Shown one piece after another: positions 16,301-46,300 of a DNA stretch of 64,000 nucleotides. The notes under the pieces are model-generated. The model did no database searches, was not told the origin of the DNA, and saw only the letters and a list, made by a program, of their open reading frames with translations. The DNA is taken from NCBI RefSeq assembly GCF_902459465.1, contig NC_047080.1:5270001-5334000 (forward strand). Reading direction: 5' to 3'. The stretch comes from Asterias rubens. Lineage: Eukaryota. Positions within the stretch are counted from its first letter, which is position 1. Every line of letters begins with the position of its first letter. Made by a program: the position numbers and the translations under genes.

Positions 16301-19300
16301 AATAATTGTCATGACCAGGATTTGAACCCACACCCACCAACATAGCTTGTATACACCTGCAACCTAGGACCTCCTTGTCCCTCTTTTGCAACAGCTCCCG
16401 TTGGTTTTGTACACGTTTTCCAACTGTGGACCTTTCCCGAACCGTGGACCCTATTGCCCTCTTTTGTTATGGGTCCTCGGTTTGAATAAGTATACATGTA
16501 CCTACCCACCCAGAATTGAGTCTGACACACATTAATTGCTTTGCTCTAGAATGCATTACGATATGTGAGCAGACTATTTGATCTCATTGTCAAAACACGC
16601 ATTTGAAAAAAAACAAAAAAACTTTTATATGATTTTTTTCAACAACAAAAGACATTTGTGAATGATATCCCACTAGTAATCAGACAGATAGACAGTAATA
16701 ATCCCTGGATTGTAATTTACATAAAAACAGAAAAAGAAATGAGGAATGATTATAGAACGCATCATTGCAATCACAACAAAGTCAATGTTGAGCATTAGTC
16801 AAACAGATGCTGAATATTTTTAGTTCGTGCTTTCTCTAGTTATTTTTCTCCAGAAAGAGGACACAATTTCCTTTTTAACCATCTCTTCAAAAGATTTTCA
16901 AGAAAGTTTTCAAGAATACTTTCTCAGCGTCAGCAGTCTACTAATGTTATGATGTAAAAGTGATGTAAAAGAATTTGTTGTGACTTTATACATGTGTATA
17001 TTTAAAGACACTGGACACTATTGGTAATTGTCAAAGACCAGTCTTCTCACTTGGTGTATCTCAACATATGCATAAAATAACAAACATGTGAAAATCTGAG
17101 CTCAATTGGTCGTTGGAGTTGCGAGATAATAATGAAAGAAAAACCACCCTTGTTATACATAGTTGTGTGCTTTCAGATGCTTGATTTCGAGTCCTCAAAA
17201 TCTAATTCTGAGGTCTCGAAATAAAATTCGTGGAAAACTACGTTACTTCAGAGGGAGCCGTTTCTCACAATGATTTATACTATCAACAGCTCTCCATTAC
17301 CCGTTACCAAGTAAGGTTTTATGCTAATAATTATTTTGAGTAACTACCAATAGTGTGCACTGCCTTTAAACTGGATCAAAGATTCAAATTTGTCAGCTCA
17401 GCAATAATAAGGTTCTTAACTGCAATTTCATTATGAAAAATGTGTATACAATTGATAAATAACCCAAAATCCATATATAATTATAATAGTTTTTCTTGCT
17501 TTCATTAACCAAACAATTTCTTTTGAGATGACTCTTGATCAACAACCTAAATAAACCAGAAGCTCCAAAAAAAAGCAAAACCACTTTGATAAAATGCAAT
17601 AACAACCTGATAGTCCTGAGCCGACAAATTGAACAACAGAAAAAGTAAAGTTTGAATGAGAATTAAATTTTGACAAATAAAACAATGTAGACCATACACA
17701 CAGCTTGATTGGTCACAAACATCAAAATCATCAAAAACAATGCCATGAACCTGCACACAAAATGAATTGTTCAAATATTTAAATGAAGAGCATCTCATGC
17801 ATATGCAACGATTTTATGCAAAGTAGGCTTGTTCATGCATCATCAGCCATTGAGCATGGGTCATGAGATTGGACATTTTCAAACACAAAGGTAAAGGGCA
17901 AATTTAGGTGACAATGGGTACATTTTTAAAAATCCATTGCATATTCAAATAACGTCCCATGTTTTTTTAAAGAACTTTTGAACCAAGTATGAAGAATTCT
18001 GTAAAATGCACATTCAATTTTGCCACAAAATGTGGTTATTCACATACTATTAAAAACAGTGTTATCAGTTGAACTCTGTTAAAAAAATTGTTTAGTTGAT
18101 GGAAAAATTGTTTAGTTGTAATTTCAAAACACATTACACCAATCCGGATAGGCAGTATGCCCCGCCCATCAAGGTGGGTGGAGCATAAATGATTTAATTT
18201 TAGGCGCTTTTTATTGGTCAAGGAAGGTTGGAATTGGAAAGGTAACCTGCATTCTTAGCTAAAAAAATTAGTCCACAGTTTAGAGATTGGACTTCTTGAC
18301 AACTTTCACCTCACAAAGAATCAAGATTCTGAAAGGTTTCCTTGAAAATCTACAAAAGACATATATGTTTCAAACTACATTGTGTATTTGGAAATTTGAT
18401 AGTATTTTTCTTATTACTACAGCTACAGAAATTGAAGTAGATGTCAGCATACTGCTTGCATGAGAAATTCAAATGAGTGGGTGTGGTTGATTGACAGTAT
18501 AAACTGGGTGTGGTCTTTTGCCAAATCCGGATTGGTTCATTCTAAAAATAGGGGTTAAAAAACTGAATTGATATACATGTAGATCTGTTTGTACCTTTGG
18601 CCCATAAGCAATGAGCTTAAGAACAGCTTCAATAGTGAAGAGCACCGTAAAGGCGATGTTGAGGTAAGCTAGAACATTAACGTACTCATCAGATGCTTTA
18701 TATTGCTGGGTGATTCAAAAAATTGGGGGAGATGGAATCGGGGGGGGGGGGGGGGGGGGGGAAATGGTAGAGGAGGATAGAGGAGGTGTTTCAAAGAAGA
18801 GAAAAAAGAAAATAATACACATTTGGATGATAATGATTGACAACATGCATGGGAAACTGAAAAGAGTTCATGTGTTTCAATTCCAAATTTCTGTCTGATA
18901 AAGATGCTCATGTTGATTTTAAACTACTGATAAAAGTACAGCGGCAAAAGAGTTTGCGTTTCATACTTATTTGAATATATTTCAAAAGGTCTTTACTGTT
19001 CAGGAGATAAACAATTTGAAACTGAAAAACATCTTCTCTTTTGATTTTTCAAAAAACGAATGATAGCATGTATACGTCATGCTAAACAACAATGACAACA
19101 ACAACAACGATGACAACAACAACAACAATGCCAGAAACAACGACTGACAGAGGCACCAAAGGATATTATAGTAGACTTGTGGACAAGTCGATAAATGTCT
19201 GTCGCGGCAATAGCGTTCCCACTCTCTCTGCGATTCCCGCAACACTGGCGATTTTCTCGCAAGACTGCTGGCCCCTGCGAGCCTACTGCTCTTGTGCTGT

Positions 19301-22300
19301 GCAGTCTCATAATTGGGAAGTAGTAATCGGCAGCCGGCAGCTCCGCGCTAGGGCAGTGATCTCGCGAGAGAAGTATTCAATCGCAGAAACCTGAATCATT
19401 ACACCACCACACCATGACTTGCGACACAGACCATTTGTTAACGACTTGTCCACAAGACTAATACAATAGCTAAGATGGACGGTGGAAGAGCATAGCCCAG
19501 GAGGATGATGATGCTGCTGATGATTTTGGTGATTACACTCAGTAGAAGGTAGATCTTGCTGAGTATCTTACCCTTGGTCCAAACCCAATTAGCTTGAGGA
19601 TTGCTTCGATTGTGAAGAGGACTGTGAACGCTATGTTCAAATACTTCAAAGTGTCCGTGTAGGTAGCCTCAGCCTTATATGTCTGAGGATAGGGGGAGGC
19701 ACCGGGAGTGCCCATTGTTAGTCAAATTAGTAACTGGCTGTGTTCCGAATTGGCAGCTACATGCTACGGCTATGGCTAGATGTCCACCCCAACATGTGCT
19801 GAAGTATGGCACGCACTTAGCAATGACCGTAGCCGTAGATGTAGCCACTTATTCGGATACAGCTCTTGTTTTTTATGGAAAGGGTTAATCTACAATACAC
19901 TGATCCTGCAGTAGGCTGTAAGAGTGTTTCTTTATATGCAACTCGTGCAGAATATTGTCGCTGGATAATTGAGTAATTCGCGTCATGACGTCTGTGCTCA
20001 GCGGCTACAATTTGTTCATTCTTTGTAAATTGCTTGATTCCAATGTTCGACATGTGGAGGGGCTTAGTGATTAGCTTGTTCAATCAAAACCAACCAACCC
20101 CAGGTCATTAGAGTTTAGTGCTAGCATTTCAAAAGATTGATGTTTTGCAATAAATGGAACCTAATCGGTTCAAATCTCAAGAAAAAAAAGAAGAAAAAAA
20201 AAAAAATTCAATGTGTAATAAATGTTCGTAGTATGACTGGTACTCAGCCCTACACTAAAGGAACTGTGTCATCATGATCAACGCAGGTTTGTGGCTGTAC
20301 ATGGGATGATGAATTCTCATCCGGTTACAAGACGCACATGCGCTCTCCATAGATGCAACTTGGAGTTAGGGCGCCCTGGTGCTGTATCTGGCTGAGAGTT
20401 CATAATTCCATGTACATCAACAGGCTTTGGCTCAATTTCATAGAGCTGCTAAGCACAACAATTTGCTCAGCATGAAATTTCTTCCTTGATAAAAACAGGG
20501 TTACTAAACATTTCCATTTGTTGCATATTGCTTGTTACTCGTATTCAGCTGTCGTTTGCTTATCCTGAAAATCATGCAGAAGTTTGGTGTGCTTAGCAGA
20601 TGTGCTTAGCAGACCTATGACATTGGGCCCTGATTTGATTATGATGACACAACACCTTTAAGGATCAGTGTATTTCTAGCGATGCTGTCTTTATACAAAG
20701 CACTCAAATAGAATAAAGAATTGAATACAATAACAGGTGTCGTCATCGCTCATCTACCCCATTAGGAATCCTTGGTATCGCCATTCTCAAAATGGGCTCA
20801 AAAGGAACTTTTTTGTTGATTTTGATGCTATTTGAATGTCTCCTGATTGATTGAATGGTTTTTCTATTGGTGGACATATCAATGGCTTCAGCTCCTTAAG
20901 TGGTCCAAATTGATATTGATAGCTTATGTGAGCAGTGTTGTGTCTGATTGGCAACCATAACTTCGAGAAAATGAGTTGCAGCTTCAGAAAAGTGTCCAAA
21001 TTAGAATAGTTTAATTGAATTGTGAAGGGTTGATTCCAATTGTTACCAGAGAAGAACATTGGTTGCAATGCAAGTATCAAACTTGAAATAGTTCAATTGA
21101 GTTTTAAAGTAACAATTTTGGTTGGCAACCATACATGTAGCTAGCAGAAAATGAGTTATGTCAGAAAACTACTACCGGATACACATTGGAATAATTTAAG
21201 TGCATTTTGAAGGGTCGATTCTTATTGGTGTCTATAACTCCATGAAAATTGGTTGCAACATTAGACAAGTATCCCAAGTGTTATGAGTGATAACGACCCT
21301 GTGCATTGTTATAATTGCTAGACTACTCTATTATTCCATTCTTCATCATGGTTAACGCCATCTTGGTTGTTTCTCATTCAAGTCATTGTAAGGCCGTGCC
21401 GAAACGGCAACTTCGGCTAAAGCTGGGGCTAGATCGCGTTCGTCTGCCTATTCTTCAACACTGGCAGACGCGTTGATCTAGCCGTAGCTGTAGCCGAAGT
21501 CACGGTTTTGGACACAGCCTAACTGAGCTTGAGGTTGATGAGAAATTAGTCTGGCTACTTCTACTGTATTATAATGTAAGTATCAGTATTGAAGATTCGC
21601 TATAGAGATCATGGGTAGACAGGGAATATGTCATAAGGTTTATCGCGATTCAGAACCCCAATGCGTTGTGGGTAGGCGGTTGGGGCATTTGCGACCGCGC
21701 AGTATGTTGTCATGCCAACATGCGCACGCATGGCCAATATCTTTGTGTGGGTTCAACAGCACCCTCTCTTGATATTTTGCCATTTGCGATAAACCTTATG
21801 ATGGCGTTATCATGATGAAGGTTTGGACTACGGACTTCAATAACTCATCTAGCATCTCTGCCACAATATTAAGAAATAAAAAGCAGAAATTAAGACATGT
21901 CCGTCAGTTGAAGATATGTCCATTATGTCAAGTCCTGTTGGAGAGGGTTGAGGTGAGGGTGGGGTTAGGGTCAAGATCAGGGTCACAGTAATTTAACAGT
22001 TGGGAAGTAAAAGAAGGTCAGTCAATCAGATAATCAATAAGGTATTATTAGCTTGCATCGGAAAAAAACAAATTGCACTACGATCAATAATATGTGTAAA
22101 AAAACAAACCACAATCAATACTTTATCAATTATTGACTAAAAAATCCCCAATTAATAGTCTGTAAATAGTTGTCAGTCAATAATCGATTCAACAATGAAC
22201 AGCTTATCAATATTCAGTCAATAATCAGTTTAGCATAGAACAGCTATCAAACTATCAAACTATTGATCAATAGTCAATTCTTCAGTAGTCAAGTCAACAA

Positions 22301-28300: not shown

Positions 28301-31300
28301 GAGAAGAATGTTGGAGCATTGGTTTTTGGGAGACATTGGAAGTTTAATTATTGTGCAATTGTAGTTTTCAACTTTTATATGCATGTATAGTTGATTATAG
28401 TTTTATCTGTAACTGTTTTTAAATGATACCTGTCAATAGCGGTTAGGCGCTGTGGGATAATAACATTAAAATAAAACATCTGTTTTGGGTTGGGTGACTC
28501 GAAGAGTGCGGAACCATCCTTCTTGGTGGATGGAGAAAGGAAGATTGTTTGGGAGGAGTGGTTTGTAGGAGGGAAGAGGAGGTAAGACAGTCTACTACTT
28601 TCGGGTTGGTTATCTTGAACATCTGACAAGAAGAAGGAAAGTGTAAGACCATCCTCCTTGGAGGATGGACTAACCTCTTTGGAGGATGGAGAGAGGAAGG
28701 TGGATGGAAGGAGGAGGTAAGACGGTCTGGTACTTACGGGTTGGTGGTTCTGAAGATGATCCTCCTTGGAGGATTGAGGCAGGAATGGGTTGCTTTGGGG
28801 AAAGGGAGTGGTTAGGAGGAGGTAATAGAGTCTTCTACTTACGGGTTGGTGGTACTGAAGATGAAGAGTGAACTGAATGGAACCATCTCTTTGGGACCAT
28901 CTTCATCTTCTTCTCCTTCTACATCAAGATAAGTCAAATAAATATCTCAAAACCACAACTCTTAGGGCCTTGTCACATGAGGCTACTTTTACAGGCAACT
29001 TGGAGGCAACCATTCGTAGTGCACTGTTACAGGACCACTTTGGTAACACATTGAGTCATTCTTATTAAACAATGTCTTACAAACCCCAAGAAACAGAATG
29101 TGAACATTCAAGTGTGAATGGATTCTCTTCTTGTTGGAGATTGCCTGGAACTGGTTGCCATTAAATTACCTTGTGTGACATGGCCTAAAGTTTAATTATC
29201 TGTGGTTTCTTCAGTCGTATAATATTAATGCAAGGATAAAACTATGTGACCATTGGCATTAGTCAACTCTAAAACTAAAAATATAGTTAAATTCTATAAA
29301 CTTATGAACATTTTAGTTCAACTTAAACTTCTGTTCTTCACCCAGTATTAAAGTGGCCGTATAGAAATATTATACAGAAATATCTCCCTCCTAAATCACC
29401 AACTGGTACCAATTAAAAAGTAAAACCCTTCATCTAACTAGGTAATATGCAGATACAAGTAATTAGGTTGAACAAATAACATTTACCTTTTCAATTGTTT
29501 TTATATATAAAAGATTACAAAATAACAAATAAAATTGTCACTTTATTACTGTTTTCAATCAAAGTTGATTTTGAAAAGTCCATTTTGATGGTTTTGTTTT
29601 CATTACATTAACATCTCTAAGTATGTCCCCTTCATATCTTCTGGATATCAAGTTGCCATAGCAACATAACTTGATGTGAAGAGGACATATTTTTCTTATT
29701 TTGGTCTTGCCTTCTTCTTCATTATTGTTGGTTTTGCGGCAGCACGGACAGGACGACCAGCAATCAGAATTACAGACGGCCGTGATACACGGGCAACTCA
29801 CTGGTCCCATGGTAGGACATGGCCATGGAATACCGTTGACATTCATATAGGTATACCAGCGGCGGTACCAGGGAATTGGAAGGTCCGCATCCGTTACTTG
29901 GACGTCTGGTTGAGGTTGGGGTCATAGGTTGAAGGTCAAATTGGGTTGTGGTGGTGGTGGTGGTGGTGGTGGTTGCACAATTAAGTCAGGTTGGAGCACA
30001 ATTAACACAAACCAAAACAGGAGAAAAAGGAAGGTAAACATGTGCGGGTTAAAATGTGAAATAAACGGACAATAGACAATCATAAAAACAGGGTTTGGTT
30101 TTGTAGAGCGACAACAAACAGTTGCTATCAAATTGAACTGAATCAAACAAATAATGGTCCTATATTGAAATGTACATTATGAAGAACATTAAACATGTCG
30201 TCAGATCATAGAGAAAGATGAAGGTGAAAATTGGCTGATATAACAACTTCTAAAATAATAATTTATTCATTTATTATGCGCATGTTTTATAAAACAAATT
30301 CTTGTTATAGTAGGTTTTTTGAAGTTTATAAGAAAGATTCAACCTTTGTTTTGATGACAGGTCAGAATTTGCATAAAATAAAAGAAGATAGTAACTGAAA
30401 AGTTTGTACTGATATAGGTTTTGACTGTGAATTGTTAGCGAATGACTTTGCATAAATTAAGAAGGTTAAACTGGAAAGTTTGTGTTGAAAAATATACCTG
30501 TGACTTTGTATTGTTAGCGAATGAATTTGCATATATTAAGGAGTTGATTTGAGAAACCAAAGATTGGTTTGAGGATTAGAATAAGCGGCTCTGTGTTGAT
30601 GAAGTAGAATGAATGTTTGTATCAGGAATAATAGTGTGAGGGTTAATTCTACTCTGTTAAATAATCCATTATTAACAGTTATCAAACCCAAACCAAGATC
30701 ATATAATTACTCAGAATGCATGAATTCTCCCAAGCACTAATATGAAGAATGTTGATTAATGTGTTCTCTTACTAGACATATCAGTTTGATATGTGAAGGT
30801 TCTTAAAAAAAAAAAAAAAAAAAGGAATGAATTCCCAAGACTTGATGACAAGATGCAGAAAAGTGATATTGATGCACAAAAGAAAAGACAATGAACAAGA
30901 AGATGACTGGGAGTAACATCGGATGAATACGTACAGGACAATGGTGGGTACGGAGGTGGGGTTCTGACGGTGAAGGGTAAAGAGGTGAGATTAGGCAGGT
31001 GAGAGGTACAAAAGTGAGAGGTGCAAAGGTGAGGGATATGGGGGATGAGGGTGAGGGTAATGAGGTTCTTAGTTCTAGGTGTGAGGGCTAATTGGGGAGC
31101 TTATCCAGCATGGAGTCTAGAGGTTTGAATAAACCAACTCCTCGTTTTTATAGCTATGCAAAGCTACAATTATGGCATTTGTCAGCCCTGAACAAAGATT
31201 CAGACAATTTGGGAATCACTCAGGATTTTTTAGACTTGACGCATCGCCAAACATTTGCAAATACAATTTTGAAGAGACGTCTTTGCAAAGGGGGGTTTGG

Positions 31301-34300: not shown

Positions 34301-37300
34301 TTAAAAGAAAACCCTCTCTCTAAAACCGCATTCGTTTGATGGGAATCAGTTCTCAAAATGTTATACATTGTCAACAGCTTCAGGGGCTCTTACCATGCAA
34401 GTTTCTATGGTCATTAGTTTGTGGAGTAATTACCAAAGGTGTACTCTCCATTCAAATAGATCATTTTTGGATTTTGTTCTTAAAAGTAATTGGTTATTTT
34501 TAGGGTAAAACCAAATTGAATATTCTATCCCCGCTGCAAATTTAACATCTATTAAATTGTTGCAGTACCCGCTGCTAAAACATAGGATATGAACTGCCTC
34601 CAGCTACCGGGCAAATCTCGATGGTCTAAAATAATGTTTGACACTGCTCTAGAATTGTAAAGATCGTGGGTTCGACGCCCACCTGAGTAATACGCCTGTG
34701 ATTTGTTTTCACAAAACTCAGGAAAGTACTGAGTATACAGTATTAACACATCAATGGTTATGGGTAAAAACAAATTGATATTTTAAGGAGTTCTTATTTT
34801 TACCTGAAATACCGTCATGAGGGCAATAGGGAAGATGTCAAAATTGCTGGCAGGCTTCGGGCTTTCATGATCGTAGTTGAAGCTTGGGGAAAATAAGACA
34901 AATTCAACGTGTCAATTGATCAATTATAACAACTGGTATCCTTGAGAATTCTGTCACTTTGCTTTCACATTTTTGCGAATTGATTGAATATTTTCAGTTG
35001 TTTACAGTACACCTTTGTTTGAAATGCCAAAGGGTATGGTTGGTTGGTTGATGATAAATTAGTCTGGTTCTATTGTATTGGCAACACACTCATAAACATA
35101 GTAATGAGATACATGGAACCAGACAAAATCATGCAAATGAGTATTGGTTGATTGATGACAAAAATAGTCTGGTTCTAATGCATTGGCCACGCATTCACAT
35201 ACATGTTGATGAGATACAAGGAACCAGACAAAAATATACAAATGAGTATTGGTTGATTGATGACAAAAATAGTCTGGTTCTAATGCATTGGCTACGCACT
35301 CACAAACATAGTAATGAGATACAAGGAACCAGACAGAATTATGCAAATGAGACAGAATACTCAGGATAACAGCTGTAGTTTGGTTGAATCATAAAAATAA
35401 TCATACAAATTTACATTATAAAAATTCTTACAGCTAAAATTGTTCTATACAATTCATACAAAATACTTTTTAACTCATAGGCTACCTTTAAAATGTAATA
35501 TATGTACTGAAACATAGTTAACACAATCAATGTAGCTTTGACATTTTGAAATAATGTTAAAATTTATTATTAACAGGTGTAAATGCCAATTAGCTGAATA
35601 TTAATGTCATGTTTATTTTACAATAATTGTTTTGTTTTAAAGATGTTAAAAATTTGCATCAAGGATAAAGAGTATAATTGTTTTGTTTCAATACATACTT
35701 GTTTTTTAGTTGATGGCATTTTAATGGTTTAAATTGTTGAAGTCAAATCAATGGACTGATTATCAAATATGTGGTGAATTAATGGATAGGATGTTAAAAT
35801 TATTCAGATCATGTGTAACGTAATCATCTAGGGTGATGCTAGTGGATTAGATGCGCAAAATGTGTACAAAAATGAACGAACACAATAAGAAATACCAATA
35901 AAGTACAATGTAGTTATTTTCAAATGGTATTTCATTATCAGAATTAAGACAAAAAAGAAAAAAAATATCCATGGTTTTCAACAATTTCTAGTTCACCCTA
36001 ATACAACAGTAAGTGCGTACCTGCTTAAAAACATCAAATTTTATGCTAATACTTTGAAAGCAGGTCATAAAAATGTATTGTATTTTTAAATAATCCAACA
36101 CATTCTTCCTACCTAATTATTGTGTGCGATGTGTATATAGCTTGGAATAACACCCCCATTACTAAAATGGAACACTCTTATCCACCAAACATAAATTTAT
36201 ACGACTTCAAGTTACATAAAAATTCGGAATATCCCTTAATGGCACATTCTCACATGGTTGTTTTCACAATAGTTTCTTTTGTTCGGAGACATAAGTGGTT
36301 GAATGAAAGCATATTCATATGCAAATTTTTCATAAATAATTCTGTTTTTTATTAAACTAGCATTCTTTGCAAATGTTAACATTTTATTACAGATAACGTT
36401 CTTGATGCTCATTCTGAAAGTACACAAAACATATCTTTGCATTTTATGTGAACAAAACTTCACACTTTTTGTTTAGCACTTTCCGTAAATATAAAGCCGT
36501 TTTTCATTTGTTACAATTGTCATTTTCCCCGACACTTGTCCAAATCTTCTTACACTTGTTACAGATAAATATATTTCTTGACACCTTATTAAATATGTAA
36601 ATTTTTGTCTTTGGTGAGTCTGAATCAATAAGAAGTTGTTAAGACGTCTCCGTCACCCGAGTGTAGGGTTTAGGTGTCATCGTGAGACATTCTCAAGGCA
36701 GCATCCTCCGTTGCCAAGGAGGAAGGGGGCGAGAGTGCATCTTACTAAAACGTGAGAAGGTGTCTTCGAGGTGATATCTTTAATCAAATCTCTTATAATC
36801 TTACAATAGAAGATGATCATGAAAAAATTATTTCTCTTTGTGTCCGACCGAGGAAGAGGTGGAGTCGCAAAGGAACTGATTTTTTGGGGGGCATCCTTCA
36901 GGCTCCAGCTGTTTCTTTTTCTTTACTTTATTTAAATTGCTCTTTGCTGTATTTTTCAATGTTTTTAACCTAATTAATGTGCATTATTGTATTTTGTCTT
37001 TTTATTCCTGAGAAATAAAATAAATATAAATATAAGTGTTACCACAAAATCACGATTTGTTGGGAGAGTTTTTTAAAATGGCTTCCAACCATCTATCTCA
37101 TAGGATCATTTAAATTTTGTTGAAGGAAACAACGTAAAAGGCAATTGTGAAAGACACGTACAGGAAATGTGGTCTGGCGACGCTGTCCTTGTGATGTGCA
37201 AGCCAGGATTTATTAGTGCTTTTTAATTTTGATTGTGGTTCAAGCTTAGAATGGGTACCAGTAGTCTGAGCGCTATAATAACTTGGTTGTATAAGATGGA

Positions 37301-40300
37301 CGATCGTATGGAAAATCCCATTACGGTGTGTTCAATACATAAGCCAGCCATTTCCGCCGTGCCTGATTACAAGTTCTATCTAACAATAGAGCCCATAAAT
37401 TATTTTCTGATGTCAGTTTGTGCTCCATTGAATTGGTTTTCTTTTTAAAATGAAAACAAGAGAATTATTTTCTTTGACTTTGAGTGCGTTGTAAAAGTGG
37501 AATGAATAACTAATTGCATGTTGTTGTATTTTTTTTTTTTCAAGAGCATCTTTGTTCAGAGGTAGAGTGGTTTTGGCTTTTGTTGAGCCATGAACAAGTA
37601 ATTCTTCTGTAATAAATTTTAATTATAAAATGATAATTAAATTGGTTATTGAGTTCAACTAAGCAATGCTGTTTTCAGATAAATGAATTTGTTTATGTTA
37701 ATGTGAATTAGAGTTTTGAATTTTGTGTTGAATTAAATCAATTTAAGACAGATTAAAACTGGTAAGTACGAGTATTATACATGTCATCAGGGATCACAGA
37801 TTCTAAATTAAATTTTCAAATGGCGAGTATTTTTTGCTGAAACTACATGATCTGAGGAAACATTATTTGTTGTACTAATTTTTCTTTTTCCTACCATTTC
37901 TTAGTATTTCCTTTAATTTGCTTAGGTTATTATTTGTATAAGCCTGGTTCTTGTGAGTCCTTTTAACCACAAATAAAATATCTACATAATTAGTAAATAT
38001 TAAATATACTTCTCTAAGCCTATTTCAATAAAAAATATAATGAATATTAACTTGAAGTTTTTCAACTTTCTACAGACGAGTAAAGATTTGATGAATTTGC
38101 AAAAAGTGGAAATGTATTAGGATAGTATTTTTTTTAAGCAAAGTGTACAAATGTAAAGATTCTTTGCATCGTGCGTATCGTGAATGAAACAACATGCCAT
38201 ACTCGAGTAAAATGTGAAATTTTGAAATCAGTATCGGCAATGAGATGAGATAATAATATAGAATTTCACAGTTGGTTGTTTTGTTTGGCAATGCACTGCA
38301 ACTTAAAACACTAGTGATACAAATAATACATCAATGCTTGGTGATGTCAAGAATTGAGTGCAGAAAATCGGCGGCAAATTTACCTTCCACCAAACAGCTG
38401 CATTCCAAGAAGAGCAAAGATGAGAATGAAGAGGAAGAGGAGGAACAGCAAACTGACAATGGAGCGCATACTACTCAGGAGGGATACCACCAGGTTTCTT
38501 AACGAGGACCAATATCTGGAGGGACGAAATCGGGTTGACGAGGGGGCGACGACGAGGTGGGGCAAGAGGGGCAAGAAATTGACACAGAAAGAGAGAATGA
38601 GGTAGGAAGAGGATTGGTGGAAGAGTTGAGAAAACATCAATTAGATGAGATGAGATTGGGTTTGAAGAAATGGAATGAAAGAAGTTTTAAGAGAACACAT
38701 CAATAAGACGAGATTGAAGACGATAAGGACATGAGATGGGAGGAATTTTAAGAATTGATGTAGAGGGTAGGAATTCAAGAAAGTAAAGAAGATTAAATAT
38801 CAGCGGAAGATTTTAAGAAAGGTGTAGAGAGTGGAAGGTTTGAGGGAGAAGAGAATAGGTAACAAGGTGGAGATGGGTTTGGATCAGTGGAGAAATGAAG
38901 GAAGAGTAGGCAAGGAGGAATGAATGATGTACACAGGACAATCGAGTAGGTACAAGATAATGATTTGAGGACGAGAGAAAAGAAAGGAGTGTGGAATGGG
39001 TGAGTTCAGGATACAAAGGGTGAGAAATGGGAGGGAAAAAAACAAAAAAACACAATTAACATTAGTGCTTTGTGCACCATGGTTTCTGTTGCCATGGTAT
39101 CGTAATTGATGCTGTTGTGGTTGACACTGTCTGACCATGAGGAAGCTGACACTCAGCAGACGAGGCACCTCAGGTGATGATGGTCACACTCTGCATCTTC
39201 AAGAAAATTAAACATGTCCTTGGAGGACGGAAGAAGAAGTCTGTGAATCGAGATGGGAGGTTTATCTTTATGTGAACATGCAAGCTGCAAATGTGTGTCA
39301 CAGTGTGACAGAGGATAAATATTGGGAAAAAGATACAAAACGTTAAGAAAAATAATTTTGAGTCGTGTAATGTCTTGAGAATTTTAGAAGGATTAAAAAT
39401 GATTGTGTTGAGATGAAAATGAACAGCTTTCTGAATAGAGAAAAATAAAGAAGAGATATTTTCAGTGAATTAGACTTCAAGGGAAGGTACAACAGTCCTG
39501 TCAACAAGGTTTTCATTACTTTTTTAATAGATTTTTGGAGATTAGAACAATTTAAATCAATTTCCCCTTGCAATCGTTTCTGCTACTTTCAAACATTTCA
39601 ATTTTTGTATGAGTTGTTTTTTTGTTTTACTTATTGTTAACTAAAGACTGTTGTACCTTCTCTTTTTCTAGAAACATGTTGCAATGCTGGACAGTCACTC
39701 AGCCACTGAAAATAAATAAAAAACACACAAGAATTTGGCAAAGTTGTGGAATCTCCAGAGCTTGGGAAACAAAATGTGAGATGAAAATGACATGAACATA
39801 TGAGAAAATCTGACGGTCCTAAACTGATTACCAGGAGGCTTACCTAACCTCCAAAGATCGAGTCTTATTTTCAACTGAGCTTCAAAGAACATATATCTTG
39901 TTGTCACCAATCACCTACAGTCCTAGACTATGAATCATATAGGGACAACCTATGGCCCTTTTTGAAACCATGGCCTCGGCTCCAGATTCGGCTCAGGCTA
40001 GCGGTTTGCTTTGACACTTGGGCATGCTTTGCGTACATGCTCTTGGGTCGATTTAACAAAGAGTTTGGACTAGCCCTAACTTAGGAGTAGTCCTTGGAGA
40101 TACTAAAAACATATGGCTTGTCCGAACTTAGGACGAGTAACTCATCCTAACTCGAGATAAGACTCGTCTTAACTCTTTGTGAAATCCACCCCAGGGCTTC
40201 TGAAGAGAAACGAAGCCTGAAGCCGAATCCAAAGCCAAAGCCATGGATTTGAAACGGACCTACATTATGTGGCTAGCCTTCGCGTTTTTCTACGGGTGTC

Positions 40301-43300
40301 TGCCATTCTGGCATACTTACGAACCCCCGAAGAGCTGCATGCCGAGTAAGGCAAAGATGACGATAAACAAGAAGAGCAAAAAGACAAGACTGACAATGGA
40401 GCGTATACTATGCATCAACGACATGATGAGGTAACGCAATGGAGACCAGTATCTGAGAATGAGGCAGCAGGAAGGAGATAAAAGAATAAACCAAGAGGGA
40501 GTTATGGAGCAACCTCTATCCCAAACTACAAGCTAGCGATGTGAATAATTAACCAGGGGAGGGATGCGGGGTTGGTGAAAGTTTGTTCCATGCTTTTGAC
40601 ATGAATGAAACTTGACTTTGCCAAAGGGGGTTGGTTTAGAATTGATATTGGGTGCATGATTTGAATCAGGGGATTTTGTTTTTAGCATACAATACTGTTT
40701 GGTATGTACAAGGTTTGAGACTTATCAAAACGTCCAACCCATAGGAAGTCATGCAAAATGAGATGTACAGTACGAGTCACATAGAGTTATATATAAGAAC
40801 TAGAGGGCGCACTGGTGATGCTTCTTGCACAAACGCGATGGGACCGCAAGGAGACTCGCATGCGCCATTCTGTACGCGCGTTGAATATGAAGTACACGTT
40901 GGAGTTTGTGTTTATTGAACGCTACGCGATGCTGTTTTGTCAAATTACAAAATGGGTGCACAAACGCACGCTGTGCGATGCCTGTTTTGTAAACTTAGAA
41001 AATGGCCGCCTACGCGCATGCCGAGTCGCGTAAATAGGCCAGTGCACCCTCTAGCTCTCATATATAACTCTATGATAAGTCATCAGTTGCAACTTGAACC
41101 AAAGTATTAGTAAAATAATCTATTTTTTTGTTGCAAATTGGCTTTTGATCACGAGCTTGAGAACCTAACACATATTACACATAATAGTATTTAGTTATAC
41201 CACTTAGCAAGACTGACATATCTGTAACAGCAGTTTGCAAAATAGATAAATTTCAAGATTTTCTCTAAATAATGAATTTGGTTCATTGTCCGACTGTATG
41301 ATGAATTGATCAGTTTGGATTTTGTGTAAAAAAACGGTTCAAATTCACCTAGAAAAAAAGGACTTTTTAAGCAATTTATTTGACTAAAATAATGTGATGG
41401 TGGGCGAGAGGTGGGGGGGGGGTGGTAGAACTAGCTCCTAAATGACATTAGCACACGTAGCTTCTACATTGTTTATATGAAAACTATTCTCCAACAAACG
41501 CCACCCTGGGGGGACATGTAAGCGATAAAAAAACAAACAGATTTTGTGTTAGTTTGAGGAAGAAATATTCTGCTAATGCAATGAATTATGAGTTGCTGTT
41601 TTGCAAAAAAAAAATTTCCCAAATGAGCGCGTGGGTGCTGAGATGATGAGTTACTGGAAAATAAACACAAATCTGAAGTTAGTACATTTTTAAAATAAAC
41701 ATTTCAATTAAAAGCACATGATAAGTAGCACTATCTGGGACTGTTGGATGATGTTGTCACGGACAATCGTAGATGCGGAGTCATGATCTCCAGGAATCAC
41801 TTCAGTAGAAAATTGTAATAAATACACAAATAATGAATAGTATTGTCCCAAATGTCAAAAGATTTACAAATTTCAAAGAATACTTTTTTCCACAATAGTT
41901 TGCCACAATCGATATACCTCCAATAGCTTTTACTGTCCACAACTTCTATGCTTCCTCATCGAGTAAGTTTGTATGGTTTTTGAGGAATGAACCAATCTCC
42001 TGAAAACAAACCCAGGGAAAAGGCCAGAAACCCATCAATCCCCAAACATCATATTTCCTCATGTAGAATTCTATAACCCTCTTTGTTGTTATAATAGAAA
42101 GACACTGAAAGTTACTAACCTTGTTACTTTGAATATTCTAAGAAGACGTAAAGCTCGGAGGACACTGAGACCAAAAGATCCACCTTGGAAATTGGTGTAG
42201 ACGACTTCAAACAAGCTGGCAAGAATAACCTGTAAGGTAAGATGGGTATTGTAAGATGTAGGTGTTTAGAGAGTAGACGATGGGAGGACGGAGTTAAAGA
42301 TTAGTTGAGGTTGGCCGTAGCACCATGTGAAAATCTTTTGAGAGGCTCTTTTGTTCTGAAAAGAAACAGTGGTTTACAACTCAATGTTTCGTTCAGTTTG
42401 CTCTGATGAGCATATTTAGGAGGATGCTAAAATCTTGATAATGTATTACAAGGTTAATTGGCTGATTGCTTGTTTGTTTGTTTGTTTAGATGATCTAGTT
42501 GTCAAGGGAACTCGGCAAACCCCCACAAGGGGATTAAAACGAACAGCCAATCTATCTCATACAAACATTTGGTTTAATGTCTTTGATTATAAATAGTACA
42601 AATCAAGAAATTGTGATTCAGTAACTAGACACGATACTTAGTTCGGTAGGATTCGAACCCAGTGGCATGCTGATGTGATTGATGTCATTTGAATACTCAC
42701 CAAGCAGTCAAACTTATTGAAGGCAGACTTGAAGTAGGTTTGAGGGCCAAGACCGTAAATCTTTATCGCCATCTCAGTGATGAAGATACCCAAGAAAACA
42801 TACTCCGCACGTGCTGTGAAAAAAAAATTAAAAATTGCTTAAGTTGCAGATTACACAGGACAGAACATCAATCTAATTGACCCATTGCATATGACTTCAC
42901 AGTCTTAAAAAGGAGACAGATCAATAGCTGTTCTCTGTGCGTAAAAACGTGCGCATGACCTCAGCGAACCTTTGCTTAGCATGAAATTTCTTCCTCGATA
43001 AAAACAGGATTACCAACAAAATTTACATTTGTTGACTATTGCTTGGTACTTGTATTCAGCTGTTGCTTGACTATCCTGAAAATCACGTGGAAATTTGGTT
43101 GAGAAATCCTGTTTTTATCGAGGCAAAATTTCATGCTAAACAAATTTTTCTGCTTAGCAGCTCTATGAAATTGAGCCCTGTTTGGAGGATCAAGCTAGCA
43201 GCTAGAATTTGTTCAGGGCAGACAATCTATATTAGCACCCAAGGTATTGGAAGTTGATGAACTTGTTTCCTGAGGTGAAGCTTAGGGAACTAAGTTTGTC

Positions 43301-46300
43301 AACTTCCAATACTTAAATGAACCATGTTCTATTTGTCTTACTATACCTCATACTGCTCTAATCAAATACCTTCTTTAAAAACTAGATTTATGTATGTCAC
43401 TGGTTTTCAAGGACTAATTTAGTTGTGTCTGTTTTTGTTTGATTTGTTTTTTTTTGGTGTACTGCGCCTTGGAACACCCAGCAGGGTGGATATCTGCGCA
43501 TTACAAGTCTTTTTGATTGTAAGTATTAGTTTGGCATTATTGAGCTTAAAAAAACATATATTGACATTTATGCATGTTGTCACCTTAAGCAACGGCCATG
43601 TTTGCGAAAGTGTAATACACCTATGTGACAGTTCTAAGAGTGCTTTTGTAAAGTGCAGGCATTGTAAACAACTGCACATGCGATAGTGTACTTATTCTGC
43701 GCATTTATCCAGTGTAACTGTTGCACACATGCAAAAGTATACTATGCGTGCGTATTTAACCATTGCATGAATTCTGGCATTTACACTTGTTTTAAAGCAT
43801 CACATGATGGTGAATAGACCAGTGAGAACTCGGCACTTGATCATGAAAATGTATAAGGTAAAGTAACAGTAGATAATGCTATTTAGCATTTAGTGTAAGC
43901 AGTTATAAACTTACTAAGAAAATCATCCAGCCAATCTGGTTGCTCGTAGTGCTCAATGGCCACGCAGACCGTGTTCAGAAACACCAGAATGATGACTAGC
44001 CAATAAAACGCCTGCGTTTTGACCATGTGACGTACGGTGAATCGTAATCTCTTCTCTCGTTGCCGTAGCCACAAACACCGCTTCCGTTTCTGCTTGGATT
44101 TCTCTGGTTTGTTAGATTTGTGGGAATCGGTTAGTTTGGCTTTATCTATGGGTTACATTAATGCGGTGGTTGATGAAGGGGTTAGATTGGTGGAAATCGT
44201 GGTAAGCATGGGAAAATGTTATTTGTGGTTTAAAAAGGTTAAGCACACAAGCGTGACCGGTTTGTTTAAGATTAGTAGGTCAAATCGGGAGAGAAAAAAA
44301 AGAAAAAAACTATATTACTAAACATAATCTAGGTAGATATGTATGATGTATTGATAACTACTTACTTACTTGAATTATTGGTTAGATTAGTACATATACA
44401 CAGTTAAAACACAACTTATGTTTTTGTATGACAACGCTCACACCAAGAAGGGTTACAGGGGAACAAACAAGTTTCCCTAATCGTGAAGGGTTACAGGGGA
44501 ATAAAACAGTTTCCCTAATCGTGGACACTTGCTTTACATTAGTTGAATTAGTTTCACAAAAAAAGGTTAATGGCCTGATGTTTGGATTCTAGCAGAGTAT
44601 TTCTCTAAATAAGTCTGTGGATGTTTGTGTTCTGTGTCTTTTTGTGTGTTTTTTGTACAAACAGTACCCAAACCCTTTAGAGATAAATTATCTGTTGTAT
44701 AATCCATGTGTTTGTTTCAATGTAGTGCACTGAACTAGACTCAGCAACTTAAAGGCAGTGGACACTATCGGTAATTACTCAAAATAATCATTTGCAGAAA
44801 ACCTTACTTGGTAATGAGTAATGGGGAGAGGTTGATAGTATAAAACATTGTGAGAAACGGCTCCCTCTGAAGTGACGTAGTTGTCGAGAAAGAAGTAATT
44901 TTCCACGAATTTTATTTCGAGACATCAAGTTTAGAATTTGAGGTCTCGAAATCAAGCATCTGAAAGCACACAAATTCGTGTGACAAGGGTTTTTTTTCTT
45001 TCATTATTATCTCGCAACTTGGATGACCAATTGAGCTCAAATTTTTACAGGATTGTTATTTTATGCATATGTTGAGATACACCAAGTGAGAAGACTTGTC
45101 TTTGACAATTACCAATAGTGTCTAGTGTCTTTAAAGTAAGGCAGTGGACACTATTAGTAAAAATAATTATTAGCATAAAACCTTTCTTGGTAACGAGTAT
45201 TGTGGGAGGTTTATAGTATAACATGGTCTCTGAAATGGCGTAGTTTTCAACAAAGAAGTAATTTTCCAGGAATTTGATTTCGAGACCTCACATTTAGAAT
45301 TTGAGGTCTCGAAATTTAAGCATCTGAAAGCACACAACTTCGTGTGACAAGGGTGTTTTTTTTCTTTCATTATTATCTCGCAACTTCGACAACCAATTGA
45401 ACTCAAATTTTCATAAGTTGGTTATTTTATGCATTTGTTGAGATACACCAAGTGAGAAGACTGGTCTTTGACAGTTTCCAATAGTGTACATTATCTTTAA
45501 GGTATAAATTATCTGTTGTATAATCCATATATGTTTGTCTCAATTTAGTGCAATGAACTAGACTCAGCAACTTAAATGTTTCAGCAACATTCATTTAAAA
45601 TTCATAGCCGTTATAGTTGAATGTTTCTTTGTGAGACCAGGGTTCAGCCATAGGCTAGTTACTTTAATGCTTGGTTGTTTTTTTTTTAACGCAGGCTTGT
45701 TTTTTATCTGTTAATGGCGACTTGGGTACGTGCGAGTAAGGTTCTGGCTAGCTGAACACAAAGGCTAATGTTAAGAATTCAAAATGACAATTAGGCGAGA
45801 ATTTTGTTTGGAATTACGACTCTCCTCTTGGAAAATTAGTTTATTTGGGTCAATAATGGATGGTGTGGGGGTTAGGATTAGGGGACTAAAGGAATGGGTG
45901 GGGGATAGAGTCTGGGGATTGTTGGGGGATGTTCAGTTGAATGAAGGGATGGATTGTGAGTGGGATGGGGGATAGGGTCTGCCTAGTGGGTTTGGTGGGG
46001 TTTTTAGGAGAAAGGGTCCAGGCATTGATGGGACGGATAATGGGTGGTGTGGGGGTTAGGATTAGGGGATTGAAGGGATGGTGGGGGTGTGGTCAGGAGA
46101 TTGAAAGGATGGGTGTTGAGTGGGGTGGGGGATAGGGTCATGGAAGGGACTGAGGAAAAGAGGCATTAGCGGAAGAGGGATCACACACTATAAAACTCTC
46201 ACTCGATTAATTGGTGTCAAATGGCTTGATTTGTTATAATGTTATTTCAGATGACTTTTAGCAGAAATGACAGCAAAAAGTGGTTAAATAACCCGATGTA

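What the first reader, a model, noticed from the sequence alone, without database searches (positions are those of the whole stretch)
38384..40452. Duplicated IIS4-S5 linker/S5 exon (14a/14b)
Seen: two 132-nt exons. 14b is close to the metazoan consensus ([19 protein letters not shown]). 14a is altered mainly in the S4-S5 linker ([19 protein letters not shown]), while S5 is nearly identical. Both are multiples of 3, so NMD cannot enforce exclusivity and a structural or protein-based mechanism is needed. Established: the S4-S5 linker couples the sensor to the gate. Inference: this is a switch in electromechanical coupling of domain II.
Basis: partly seen in the sequence, partly recalled or inferred. 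Interest (0 to 1): 0.78.

Follow-up and report, generated by a model that had tools for sequence, protein, structure and literature searches.

The report
Ancient alternative exon pair in Cav2
A sea-star nerve calcium-channel gene carries two versions of the exon that links the second voltage sensor to the pore; the pair is over half a billion years old and both copies are kept by selection, but RNA reads here show only the standard copy in use.

Summary
On the minus strand of a Cav2 alpha-1 gene (matches Asterias rubens RefSeq) lie two 132-nt exons in the same phase. 14a is 40452-40321 and 14b is 38515-38384. Both have AG/GT splice sites. They are 67% identical in DNA and 34/43 in protein, and 7 of the 9 differences fall in the IIS4-S5 linker.

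The pair is old. RefSeq models of sea urchins, a sea cucumber, a brittle star and an acorn worm carry an orthologous "a" exon, with a-only and b-only isoforms. In a tree, all a exons form one group (support 99/98), apart from b and from protostome and vertebrate Cav2.

Patiria miniata has only the a exon. Against it, 14a shows dN/dS 0.065, so 14a is under selection, not decaying.

In Asterias, 14a is in none of the 16 RefSeq isoforms I could see. The RNA reads showed only the 13->14b junction. The one contig covering 14a was unspliced.

A 550-nt AG-free, pyrimidine-rich tract precedes 14b (157 nt in the sea cucumber). This suggests repressor-controlled choice. Steric, U12 and NMD mechanisms are excluded.

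Verdict: a real new member of a known kind. The functional reading is plausible but untested. The scan's first readers noted the other exon pairs of this gene; I found no report of this pair on other DNA.

The parts
42120..42229 (-). Exon 13 (IIS3-IIS4, ends ..LRIFKVT + AG of the Arg codon), the common upstream exon
   Evidence: tblastn with crinoid Cav2 P0094; splice sites read; junction 42120->38515 seen in reads
40321..40452 (-). Exon 14a, the a-type IIS4-S5 linker + IIS5 exon (132 nt): diverged copy, not in any Asterias RefSeq isoform seen
   Evidence: orthologous to a exons of other ambulacrarians; dN/dS 0.065 against Patiria
40308..40525 (-). Block conserved with the Patiria miniata locus (78% over 220 nt). 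It covers 14a, about 72 nt of upstream intron and about 13 nt of downstream intron, and includes the element TTTGGGATAGAGGTTG at 40510-40525
   Evidence: blastn; sequences shown; element position
38516..40320 (-). Intron between 14a and 14b (1805 nt), too long for steric exclusion
   Evidence: coordinates
38518..39067 (-). 550-nt AG-free, 75% pyrimidine, 7% G tract directly upstream of the 14b acceptor. A CACTAAT branch-point-like motif and a U run sit at its 5' end
   Evidence: Longest AG-free stretch on either strand of the window; 17 of 20000 composition-matched shuffles lack AG; 20 TCTT motifs
38384..38515 (-). Exon 14b, the canonical IIS4-S5 linker + IIS5 exon (132 nt); the form seen in all RNA junctions and all Asterias RefSeq isoforms seen
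   Evidence: dN/dS 0.011 against Apostichopus b
34804..34881 (-). Exon 15 (S5-pore loop, [26 protein letters not shown]), the common downstream exon. Its first base C completes Ser after either 14a (TC) or 14b (AG)

Best explanation
14a and 14b are the two members of an ancient tandem-duplicated alternative exon pair in the single Cav2 (N/P/Q/R-type) calcium-channel alpha-1 gene of Asterias rubens. Each encodes the whole domain II S4-S5 linker plus S5, and a working channel can hold only one of them. 14b is the canonical bilaterian exon and the default choice. 14a is the ambulacrarian 'a' copy and is probably included instead of 14b in a minority of cells or stages. The swap changes one hydrophobic face of the S4-S5 helix (positions 9, 13 and 16), a Ser/His at position 14, and residues flanking the conserved Arg at position 6. 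By analogy with human Cav2.3 R590, that Arg bridges to the acidic end of IIS6. The swap most likely tunes inactivation and/or sensor-to-gate coupling. The choice is most likely made by trans-acting splicing regulators. The 550-nt AG-free pyrimidine tract in front of 14b would serve as a platform for a PTB-like repressor and allow a distant branch point. Repression of 14b would then be coupled to activation of 14a. Shown: the anatomy, the orthology, the age, purifying selection on both copies, and use of 14b. Inferred: use of 14a in Asterias, the regulators, and the biophysical effect.
For: Anatomy and frame. Identity as Cav2 IIS4-S5/S5. Orthologous a exons with a-only and b-only RefSeq isoforms in S. 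purpuratus, L. variegatus, D. antillarum, A. japonicus, A. filiformis and the hemichordate G. talaboti. Same order, same 132-nt length, same phase and similar intron sizes in the Apostichopus locus L002. At nucleotide level, 14a is closer to Apostichopus a (75%) than to b (70%), and 14b is closer to b (83%) than to a (70.5%). All 8 a exons sit on one side of a branch with 99/98 support, apart from b and from protostome and vertebrate Cav2. Patiria miniata uses only the a exon (4 of 4 isoforms; locus L001 has no b exon), so the a form can make the channel on its own. Against Patiria, 14a has dN 0.068, dS about 1.05 and ratio 0.065. The Asterias branch dN (0.03) is no higher than the Patiria branch (0.0375). 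Words specific to 14a are held by runs of four other organisms. The 13->14b junction skipping 14a is seen in 5 reads of X22 and a contig of X15. The AG-free pyrimidine tract is 550 nt here and 157 nt in Apostichopus, against 18-60 nt at the a and exon-15 acceptors. Functional weight of this segment: Cav2.3 R590 (PMC9889812) and Cav1.2 S643F (PMC6050422). PTB control of the Cav1.2 exon pair 8/8a is cited in PMC12149502.
Against: No spliced read or contig containing 14a was found. X22 gave 5 junction reads, all 13->14b. The X1 contig over 14a (40259-40459) runs into both introns, so it is genomic DNA or pre-mRNA. None of the 16 Asterias RefSeq isoforms seen has 14a, although the same set does show the 30a/30b alternatives. 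Protein searches found no 14a-bearing fragment. RefSeq models with a and b in tandem are numerous for S. purpuratus and Glandiceps, so strict exclusivity is not established. No conserved intronic element or RNA pairing was found between sea star and sea cucumber. PTB-like binding is only inferred from composition. Candidate branch-point motifs occur all along the tract, so a distant branch point is possible but not shown.
Confidence: 0.68

Rival explanations
1. 14a is a silent or nearly silent exon in Asterias. The pair was alternative in the ancestor, but the forcipulatid lineage now uses only 14b, and 14a survives by chance, by very recent silencing, or for a non-coding role.
For: No spliced 14a was seen in the reads. 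14a is absent from the 16 Asterias RefSeq isoforms seen, although 30a/30b alternatives are annotated there. No 14a protein fragment was found in large collections.
Against: The reading frame and both splice sites are intact. dN/dS against Patiria is 0.065, and the Asterias branch is as constrained as the branch where the exon is constitutive. About 72 nt of upstream intron is conserved with Patiria. 14a words persist in four other organisms. Read depth was tiny (5 junction reads in one run of unknown tissue). Twenty of the 36 isoforms in the cluster could not be seen.
Confidence: 0.17
2. The two exons are not mutually exclusive. 14a is a cassette exon that, when used, is spliced to 14b, giving an in-frame 44-residue insertion, as many RefSeq models of sea urchin and acorn worm depict.
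For: Twelve of 15 S. purpuratus isoforms, 7 of 8 Glandiceps isoforms and the L. pictus model have a and b in tandem. The frame is preserved, so NMD would not remove such RNAs.
Against: A second S4-S5 linker plus S5 would add a seventh membrane pass to domain II and put the pore loop on the wrong side (inference from channel topology). a-only isoforms are annotated in seven species and b-only isoforms in most of them. Patiria makes its channel with a alone. No 14a->14b joint was among the listed joints here. The tandem models may be products of the prediction pipeline.
Confidence: 0.08
3. Exclusivity is enforced by competing RNA structures (docking and selector sites) rather than by protein regulators.
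For: This is a known mechanism for in-frame tandem exon clusters. One 23-nt, 74% complementary pairing joins the 3' end of 14b to the intron about 100 nt upstream of it, with a 10-bp perfect core (I8).
Against: About 26 such 10-bp matches are expected by chance in 7.4 kb (my estimate). The pairing is not kept in Apostichopus. No intronic block is conserved between the two species. The element conserved with Patiria has no complement in the region.
Confidence: 0.07

Closest known systems
Drosophila sodium channel para (DmNav) mutually exclusive exons C/D
   Same: A tandem pair of alternative membrane-spanning exons at the same structural position (domain II S4-S5) of a homologous four-domain voltage-gated channel (PMC4309913).
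   Different: It is a different channel family (Nav, not Cav2) and a different phylum, and must be an independent duplication. Here the exon also covers all of S5.
Drosophila Cav2 (cacophony) mutually exclusive pairs IS4A/B and I-IIA/B
   Same: A single invertebrate Cav2 gene diversified by mutually exclusive exon pairs in core channel modules. The IS4 pair shifts the activation voltage and decides synaptic localisation (PMC11828482 and PMC12370356).
   Different: cacophony is reported to have only those two pairs, neither of them in domain II. The ambulacrarian a/b pair sits in IIS4-S5/S5 and has no reported function.
Vertebrate Cav1.2 exons 8/8a (IS6) regulated by PTB
   Same: Same-size in-frame tandem exons of a Cav alpha-1 gene, chosen with the help of a polypyrimidine-tract-binding repressor (Tang et al. 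2011, as cited in PMC12149502). This is the mechanistic model I propose for the 550-nt tract.
   Different: Different domain and segment. PTB binding is shown there and only inferred from sequence composition here. The vertebrate Cav splicing review (PMC12149502) contains none of the terms IIS4, IIS5 or S4-S5.
Exons with long AG-exclusion zones and distant branch points (e.g. alpha-tropomyosin exon 3; recalled from memory, not checked here)
   Same: A very long AG-free pyrimidine tract lies upstream of the downstream member of an exclusive pair.
   Different: In tropomyosin the distant branch point lies too close to the upstream exon's donor, and that distance gives exclusivity. Here at least 1250 nt remain between the 14a donor and the tract, so steric exclusion cannot apply.

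Membership tests
Cav2 (N/P/Q/R-type) calcium channel alpha-1 subunit | Four-domain alpha-1 with best similarity to Cav2 rather than Cav1 or Cav3 | tested here: met
   Best solved-structure matches are Cav2.1, Cav2.2 and Cav2.3. The gene was mapped over 61016-2763 with a crinoid Cav2. It is identical in exons 14b-16 to A. rubens RefSeq 'calcium channel type A subunit alpha-1-like'.
Tandem-duplicated mutually exclusive exons | Adjacent homologous exons of equal length and phase with their own splice sites | tested here: met
   132 nt each, same phase, AG/GT sites, 67% nt and 79% aa identity.
Tandem-duplicated mutually exclusive exons | Mature transcripts carry exactly one member: each member seen alone | tested here: inconclusive
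   14b alone: yes (joint 42120->38515; 16 RefSeq isoforms). 14a alone in this species: not seen. Orthologous a-only isoforms are annotated in seven other species, counting Patiria, which has no b exon.
Tandem-duplicated mutually exclusive exons | No or rare co-inclusion | tested here: inconclusive
   No 14a->14b joint was among the listed joints (only the best-supported joints are shown and depth was low). RefSeq a+b tandem models exist for S. purpuratus, Glandiceps and L. pictus.
Tandem-duplicated mutually exclusive exons | Both members under purifying selection and conserved across species | tested here: met
   dN/dS is 0.065 for 14a against Patiria and 0.011 for 14b against Apostichopus b. 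The a and b groups are separated with 99/98 support.
Steric-hindrance exclusivity (tropomyosin type) | Donor of the upstream exon too close to the branch point of the downstream exon | tested here: not met
   The intron is 1805 nt. Even a branch point at the far end of the AG-free tract leaves about 1250 nt.
U2/U12 spliceosome incompatibility | One of the competing introns has U12-type splice sites | tested here: not met
   The donors are GTTAGT (exon 13), GTAAGT (14a) and GTAAAT (14b), and all acceptors are AG. None shows a U12 donor consensus.
NMD-enforced exclusivity | Co-inclusion or double skipping shifts the frame | tested here: not met
   132 = 44 x 3. In-frame a+b models exist in RefSeq.
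Competing RNA secondary structure (docking/selector) | Conserved complementary intronic elements | tested here: inconclusive
   None was found that is conserved between Asterias and Apostichopus. No closer asteroid genomes with both exons were available.
PTB-type repressed exon with extended AG-exclusion zone | Long AG-free pyrimidine tract rich in UCUU upstream of the regulated exon | tested here: met
   550 nt, 75% pyrimidine, 20 TCTT, the longest AG-free stretch in the window. The sea cucumber has 157 nt.
PTB-type repressed exon with extended AG-exclusion zone | Mapped branch point and repressor binding | not testable with these tools
   Needs lariat mapping, CLIP or minigene work.

The most novel reading that the evidence does not exclude
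The long AG-free pyrimidine tract is part of a gene-wide design. The downstream member of three of the four duplicated exon pairs of this Cav2 gene is preceded by an unusually long AG-free zone: 14b 550 nt, 30b 149 nt, 34b 153 nt. One PTB-like factor could therefore flip several channel modules together (S4-S5II/S5II, IVS1-S2, domain IV turret). That would give two co-ordinated 'whole-channel' versions from one gene, a substitute for the three Cav2 paralogues of vertebrates. Loss of the canonical b exon in Patiria would then mark a lineage that fixed the alternative channel type.
Probability: 0.12. Interest if true: 0.75.

Novelty: new member of a known kind. Interest (0 to 1): 0.5.

Why it matters
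Invertebrates with a single Cav2 gene must obtain presynaptic channel diversity by splicing. In flies, two such exon pairs have been shown to set activation voltage and synaptic function. This pair is a third, independent case in a different module, the domain II S4-S5 linker and S5. That region is the puzzle of Cav2 structures: the domain II sensor is caught 'down', and its linker arginine controls open-state inactivation. Evolution has kept two versions of this segment for over 500 million years, and one starfish lineage runs on the 'alternative' version alone. These are ready-made natural variants for testing what S4-S5II does in Cav2 gating. For annotation, 14a is in none of the 16 Asterias gene models I could see, and many sea-urchin and acorn-worm models that join both copies are probably wrong.

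Tried and rejected
(1) Whole-library phmmer with the 14a peptide: all 150 best representatives were b-like. This says little, because clustering at 50% hides isoforms.

(2) Word-indexed search with the 43-aa 14a peptide: it returned only unrelated short fragments, because of the length window.

(3) Search with the hemichordate a exon inside its full protein: only 7 candidates came back. It found Patiria but nothing outside Ambulacraria, which is weak evidence of absence.

(4) Fetching orthologous loci: most gene ranges exceed 100 kb or the isoform is not on record. Only Patiria (L001) and an older Apostichopus contig (L002) gave DNA.

(5) Read laying: most laid reads came from two repeat elements beside 14a. 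Gene coverage was only a few reads. X23 did not express the gene.

(6) Degenerate junction pattern for spliced 13->a in JGI metagenome contigs: no hit.

(7) Inverted-repeat and duplex searches for RNA pairing: nothing conserved. One RNA-duplex scan timed out.

(8) Two repeats flanking 14a as a looping-out stem: rejected, because each repeat is a self-contained hairpin element (I1 and I2).

(9) Recent gene conversion between 14a and 14b as the reason for the shared GMQLFGG ending: rejected, because nearly every codon there differs at synonymous sites.
Full report
WHAT IS THERE. The window carries most of a Cav2-type calcium-channel alpha-1 gene on the minus strand. Exons were mapped from about 61016 down to 2763 with a crinoid Cav2 protein. 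The coding sequence around the finding is identical to Asterias rubens RefSeq isoforms. At one site it matches A. rubens rather than A. amurensis: the window reads ..GGVQKGM.., where A. amurensis has ..GGVQTGM...

The local exon chain is as follows:
- Exon 13: 42229-42120, 110 nt.
- Exon 14a: 40452-40321, 132 nt.
- Exon 14b: 38515-38384, 132 nt.
- Exon 15: 34881-34804, 78 nt.

All splice sites are AG/GT. Both copies start with the third base of the Arg codon that exon 13 begins. Both end with two bases that, joined to the C opening exon 15, give Ser. The two copies use different serine codon families (TC|C and AG|C).

The copies share 67% of nucleotides and 34 of 43 residues. Twenty-one codons differ synonymously and 9 non-synonymously. 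Both align end to end with residues 591-633 of human Cav2.2, which are the IIS4-S5 linker and IIS5. Seven of the nine replacements lie at positions 4-16, in the linker.

HOW OLD THE PAIR IS, AND WHETHER 14a IS ALIVE. A region search with a crinoid Cav2 returned the RefSeq Cav2 proteins of nine echinoderm species and two hemichordates. I listed their cluster members and read the segment after ..RIFKVT. An exon orthologous to 14a is annotated in these species:
- Strongylocentrotus purpuratus
- Lytechinus variegatus
- Diadema antillarum
- Apostichopus japonicus
- Amphiura filiformis
- The acorn worm Glandiceps talaboti

Each of these species has at least one a-only isoform, and all but Glandiceps also had b-only isoforms among those listed.

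Five positions separate a from b in every species: position 9 (I/L versus V), 13 (V/M versus L), 14 (H/Q versus S), 16 (I versus M/L) and 23 (V versus L). Position 7 is Y in most a exons and N in all b exons.

In a maximum-likelihood tree of the 43-residue segment, the eight a exons sit on one side of a branch with 99/98 support. This includes 14a. All b exons fall on the other side, together with mollusc, bryozoan, nematomorph, fly and vertebrate Cav2. So b is the canonical bilaterian exon. The a copy arose once, no later than the common ancestor of echinoderms and hemichordates. That ancestor lived more than about 540 million years ago (my own knowledge).

The sea-cucumber locus L002 shows the same layout: 13, a, b, 15, both 132 nt, the same phase, and introns of about 2.1, 1.75 and 3.7 kb. 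The Asterias introns are 1.7, 1.8 and 3.5 kb. At nucleotide level 14a is closer to the sea-cucumber a (75%) than to its b (70%). 14b is closer to b (83%) than to a (70.5%).

THE PATIRIA RESULT. The last protein search, made with the hemichordate a exon, also found Patiria miniata. All four of its RefSeq isoforms carry only an a-type exon. Its locus L001 has a single exon between exons 13 and 15 and no b exon anywhere in 52 kb. There are no assembly gaps. The locus still keeps the 30a/30b pair of the gene.

That single exon aligns to the 14a region at 78% over 220 nt. The alignment includes about 72 nt of upstream intron and the start of the downstream intron. Like 14a, the exon ends in TC. Patiria therefore lost the canonical exon and runs on the a form, so an a-type exon can build a working channel.

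Between 14a and the Patiria exon, dN is 0.068 and dS is about 1.05, giving a ratio of 0.065. With the sea-cucumber a exon as a third point, the Asterias branch (dN 0.03) is no faster than the Patiria branch (0.0375), where the exon is constitutive. A decaying exon would not look like this.

Words specific to 14a are also held by sequencing runs of four other coded organisms. The 'degenerate in sister species' refutation therefore fails.

IS 14a USED IN ASTERIAS? This is the weak point. I laid four runs on 36250-42245.
- The joint 42120->38515 (exon 13 to 14b, skipping 14a) was seen in 5 reads of the raw RNA run X22 and in a contig of X15, which is a related organism.
- No 13->14a or 14a->14b joint was among the listed joints.
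- The only contig covering 14a (X1, 40259-40459) runs into both introns, so it is genomic DNA or pre-mRNA.
- Coverage of this gene was only a few reads. X23 did not express it. Most laid reads came from two repeat elements beside 14a.

None of the 16 Asterias isoforms I could see (of 36 in the two clusters) has 14a, although the same set shows both 30a and 30b. Protein searches found no 14a-bearing fragment. A degenerate spliced-junction pattern found nothing in metagenome contigs.

The use of 14a in this species therefore rests on evolutionary constraint, not on an observed transcript.

HOW THE CHOICE IS MADE. I could exclude three mechanisms.
- NMD: 132 is a multiple of 3, and in-frame a+b models exist in RefSeq.
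- Steric hindrance: the intron is 1805 nt.
- U2/U12 incompatibility: the donors are GTTAGT, GTAAGT and GTAAAT.

I found no conserved RNA pairing. One 10-bp-core pairing around 14b is at chance level and is not kept in the sea cucumber. The two species share no intronic block.

What stands out is the tract in front of 14b. The 550 nt at 39067-38518 contain no AG and are 75% pyrimidine and 7% G, with 20 TCTT motifs. It is by far the longest AG-free stretch on either strand of the window; the next is 291 nt. Only 17 of 20000 composition-matched shuffles lack AG.

The sea-cucumber b exon has a 157-nt AG-free, U-rich tract. The a and exon-15 acceptors have 18-60 nt.

A CACTAAT motif followed by a U run sits at the far end of the Asterias tract. 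Branch-point-like motifs also occur all along it, so a distant branch point is allowed but not shown.

This architecture is typical of exons repressed by polypyrimidine-tract-binding proteins. PTB control of the Cav1.2 pair 8/8a is the nearest documented case (cited in PMC12149502).

My best reading is that 14b is the default exon. A PTB-like repressor on the tract silences it where 14a is chosen, and 14a needs its own activator. The 16-nt element conserved with Patiria, 73 nt upstream of 14a, is a candidate site for that activator. All of this is inference.

WHAT THE SWAP DOES. The exon encodes the amphipathic S4-S5 helix of domain II and S5.
- Positions 9, 13 and 16 (i, i+4, i+7) lie on one helical face. 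In every species they differ between a and b by hydrophobic residues of different shape.
- Position 14 is Ser in b and His in seven of eight a exons.
- Positions 4 and 7 flank the invariant Arg at position 6.

By the alignment, that Arg is R590 of human Cav2.3. In Cav2.3 it bonds electrostatically with the acidic cluster at the end of IIS6, and mutating it weakens open-state inactivation. The same paper reports that the domain II sensor is not required for activation (PMC9889812). The sea-star gene keeps an acidic cluster after IIS6 (..MDLEDEE..).

Position 11 corresponds to Cav1.2 S643. The S643F mutation there causes a Timothy-syndrome variant with mixed gain and loss of function (PMC6050422).

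A gating effect is therefore plausible. It may concern inactivation more than 'electromechanical coupling'. Nothing here measures it.

COMPARISON AND NOVELTY. Mutually exclusive tandem exons in four-domain channels are well known.
- Insect para exons C/D occupy the same IIS4-5 position in a sodium channel (PMC4309913).
- Fly Cav2 has pairs in IS4 and in the I-II loop, and is stated to have only those two (PMC11828482).
- A review of vertebrate Cav splicing (PMC12149502) contains none of the terms IIS4, IIS5 or S4-S5.
- My paper searches found no description of this ambulacrarian pair.

The pair already sits in public gene models of other species. In Asterias, the a copy is in none of the models I could see. 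I therefore class it as a new member of a known kind, of moderate interest. Its age, the very unequal conservation of the two copies, and the loss of the canonical copy in Patiria raise that interest somewhat.

CAVEATS.
- Most S. purpuratus and Glandiceps RefSeq isoforms join a and b in tandem. Such a protein would have an extra membrane pass and is probably a modelling artefact, but I could not test this with reads.
- Only 15 members per cluster are listed, so 20 Asterias isoforms remain unseen.
- Crinoid and Saccoglossus models show only b, and I could not fetch their DNA.
- Absence of the a exon outside Ambulacraria is weakly supported.

EARLIER NOTES OF THE SCAN. First-reader notes on the same window had flagged the AG-free zone (s1-172739) and the four exon pairs of this gene (s1-172676, s1-172751). 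I re-measured the AG-free zone and checked the 30a/30b pair against RefSeq. A follow-up report overlapping this stretch exists but was withheld.

Noticed in passing
L001:22354-24462 (Patiria miniata Cav2 locus): Patiria has a single exon at this position. It is the a type (orthologous to 14a, ends in TC, shares upstream intron sequence). The canonical b exon is absent from the 52-kb locus, while the 30a/30b pair is kept.
   Followed up: yes
RefSeq proteins P0161, P0293-P0305 (S. purpuratus), P0169, P0306-P0312 (Glandiceps), P0324 (L. pictus): Many predicted isoforms join the a and b exons in tandem. This gives a duplicated S4-S5 linker plus S5 and is probably a mis-model. It also inflated their scores in the region search.
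   Followed up: partly
window 39850-40250 and 40650-41075: Two hairpin-type repeat elements flank exon 14a (inverted arms 40039-40081/40155-40197 and 40780-40815/41039-41074). They attract hundreds to thousands of RNA reads from elsewhere in the genome and account for nearly all reads laid on this stretch.
   Followed up: partly
window 18708-18856, 10995-11147, 29908-30124, 44148-44309: Further unusually long AG-free stretches on the gene strand (149, 153, 217 and 162 nt). The first two lie directly upstream of 30b and 34b, the downstream members of two other duplicated exon pairs.
   Followed up: partly
window 19572-19694 and 18601-18702: The 30a/30b pair is annotated as alternative in Asterias RefSeq: 13 of the 16 isoforms seen carry 30a and 3 carry 30b. 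The alternative copies at 58439-58564 and 10900-11019 were in none of the 16.
   Followed up: partly
window 35056-35370: Three tandem copies of a 105-nt unit (76-100% identity) lie in the intron between 14b and exon 15.
   Followed up: no
window 38494: All 9 reads of run X22 show A instead of G (plus strand). On the gene strand this is AAC to AAT at Asn7 of exon 14b: a synonymous polymorphism or strain difference.
   Followed up: yes
proteins P0063, P0064, P0073, P0101, P0143 (unnamed fragments from the representative library): Genomic ORF fragments from an unknown taxon carry a strongly diverged IIS4-S5 linker (..LRNLVIALMNALSSI..), fused without an intron to the following exon. This could be another lineage's variant or a paralogue.
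   Followed up: no
window 40321-40345 versus 38384-38408: Asteroid a exons end in ..GMQLFGG like b. Other a exons end in ..GMEFFGG (sea urchins, sea cucumber, acorn worm) or ..GMNLFGG (brittle star). Synonymous sites differ throughout, so this reflects an old conversion or convergence, not a recent one.
   Followed up: partly
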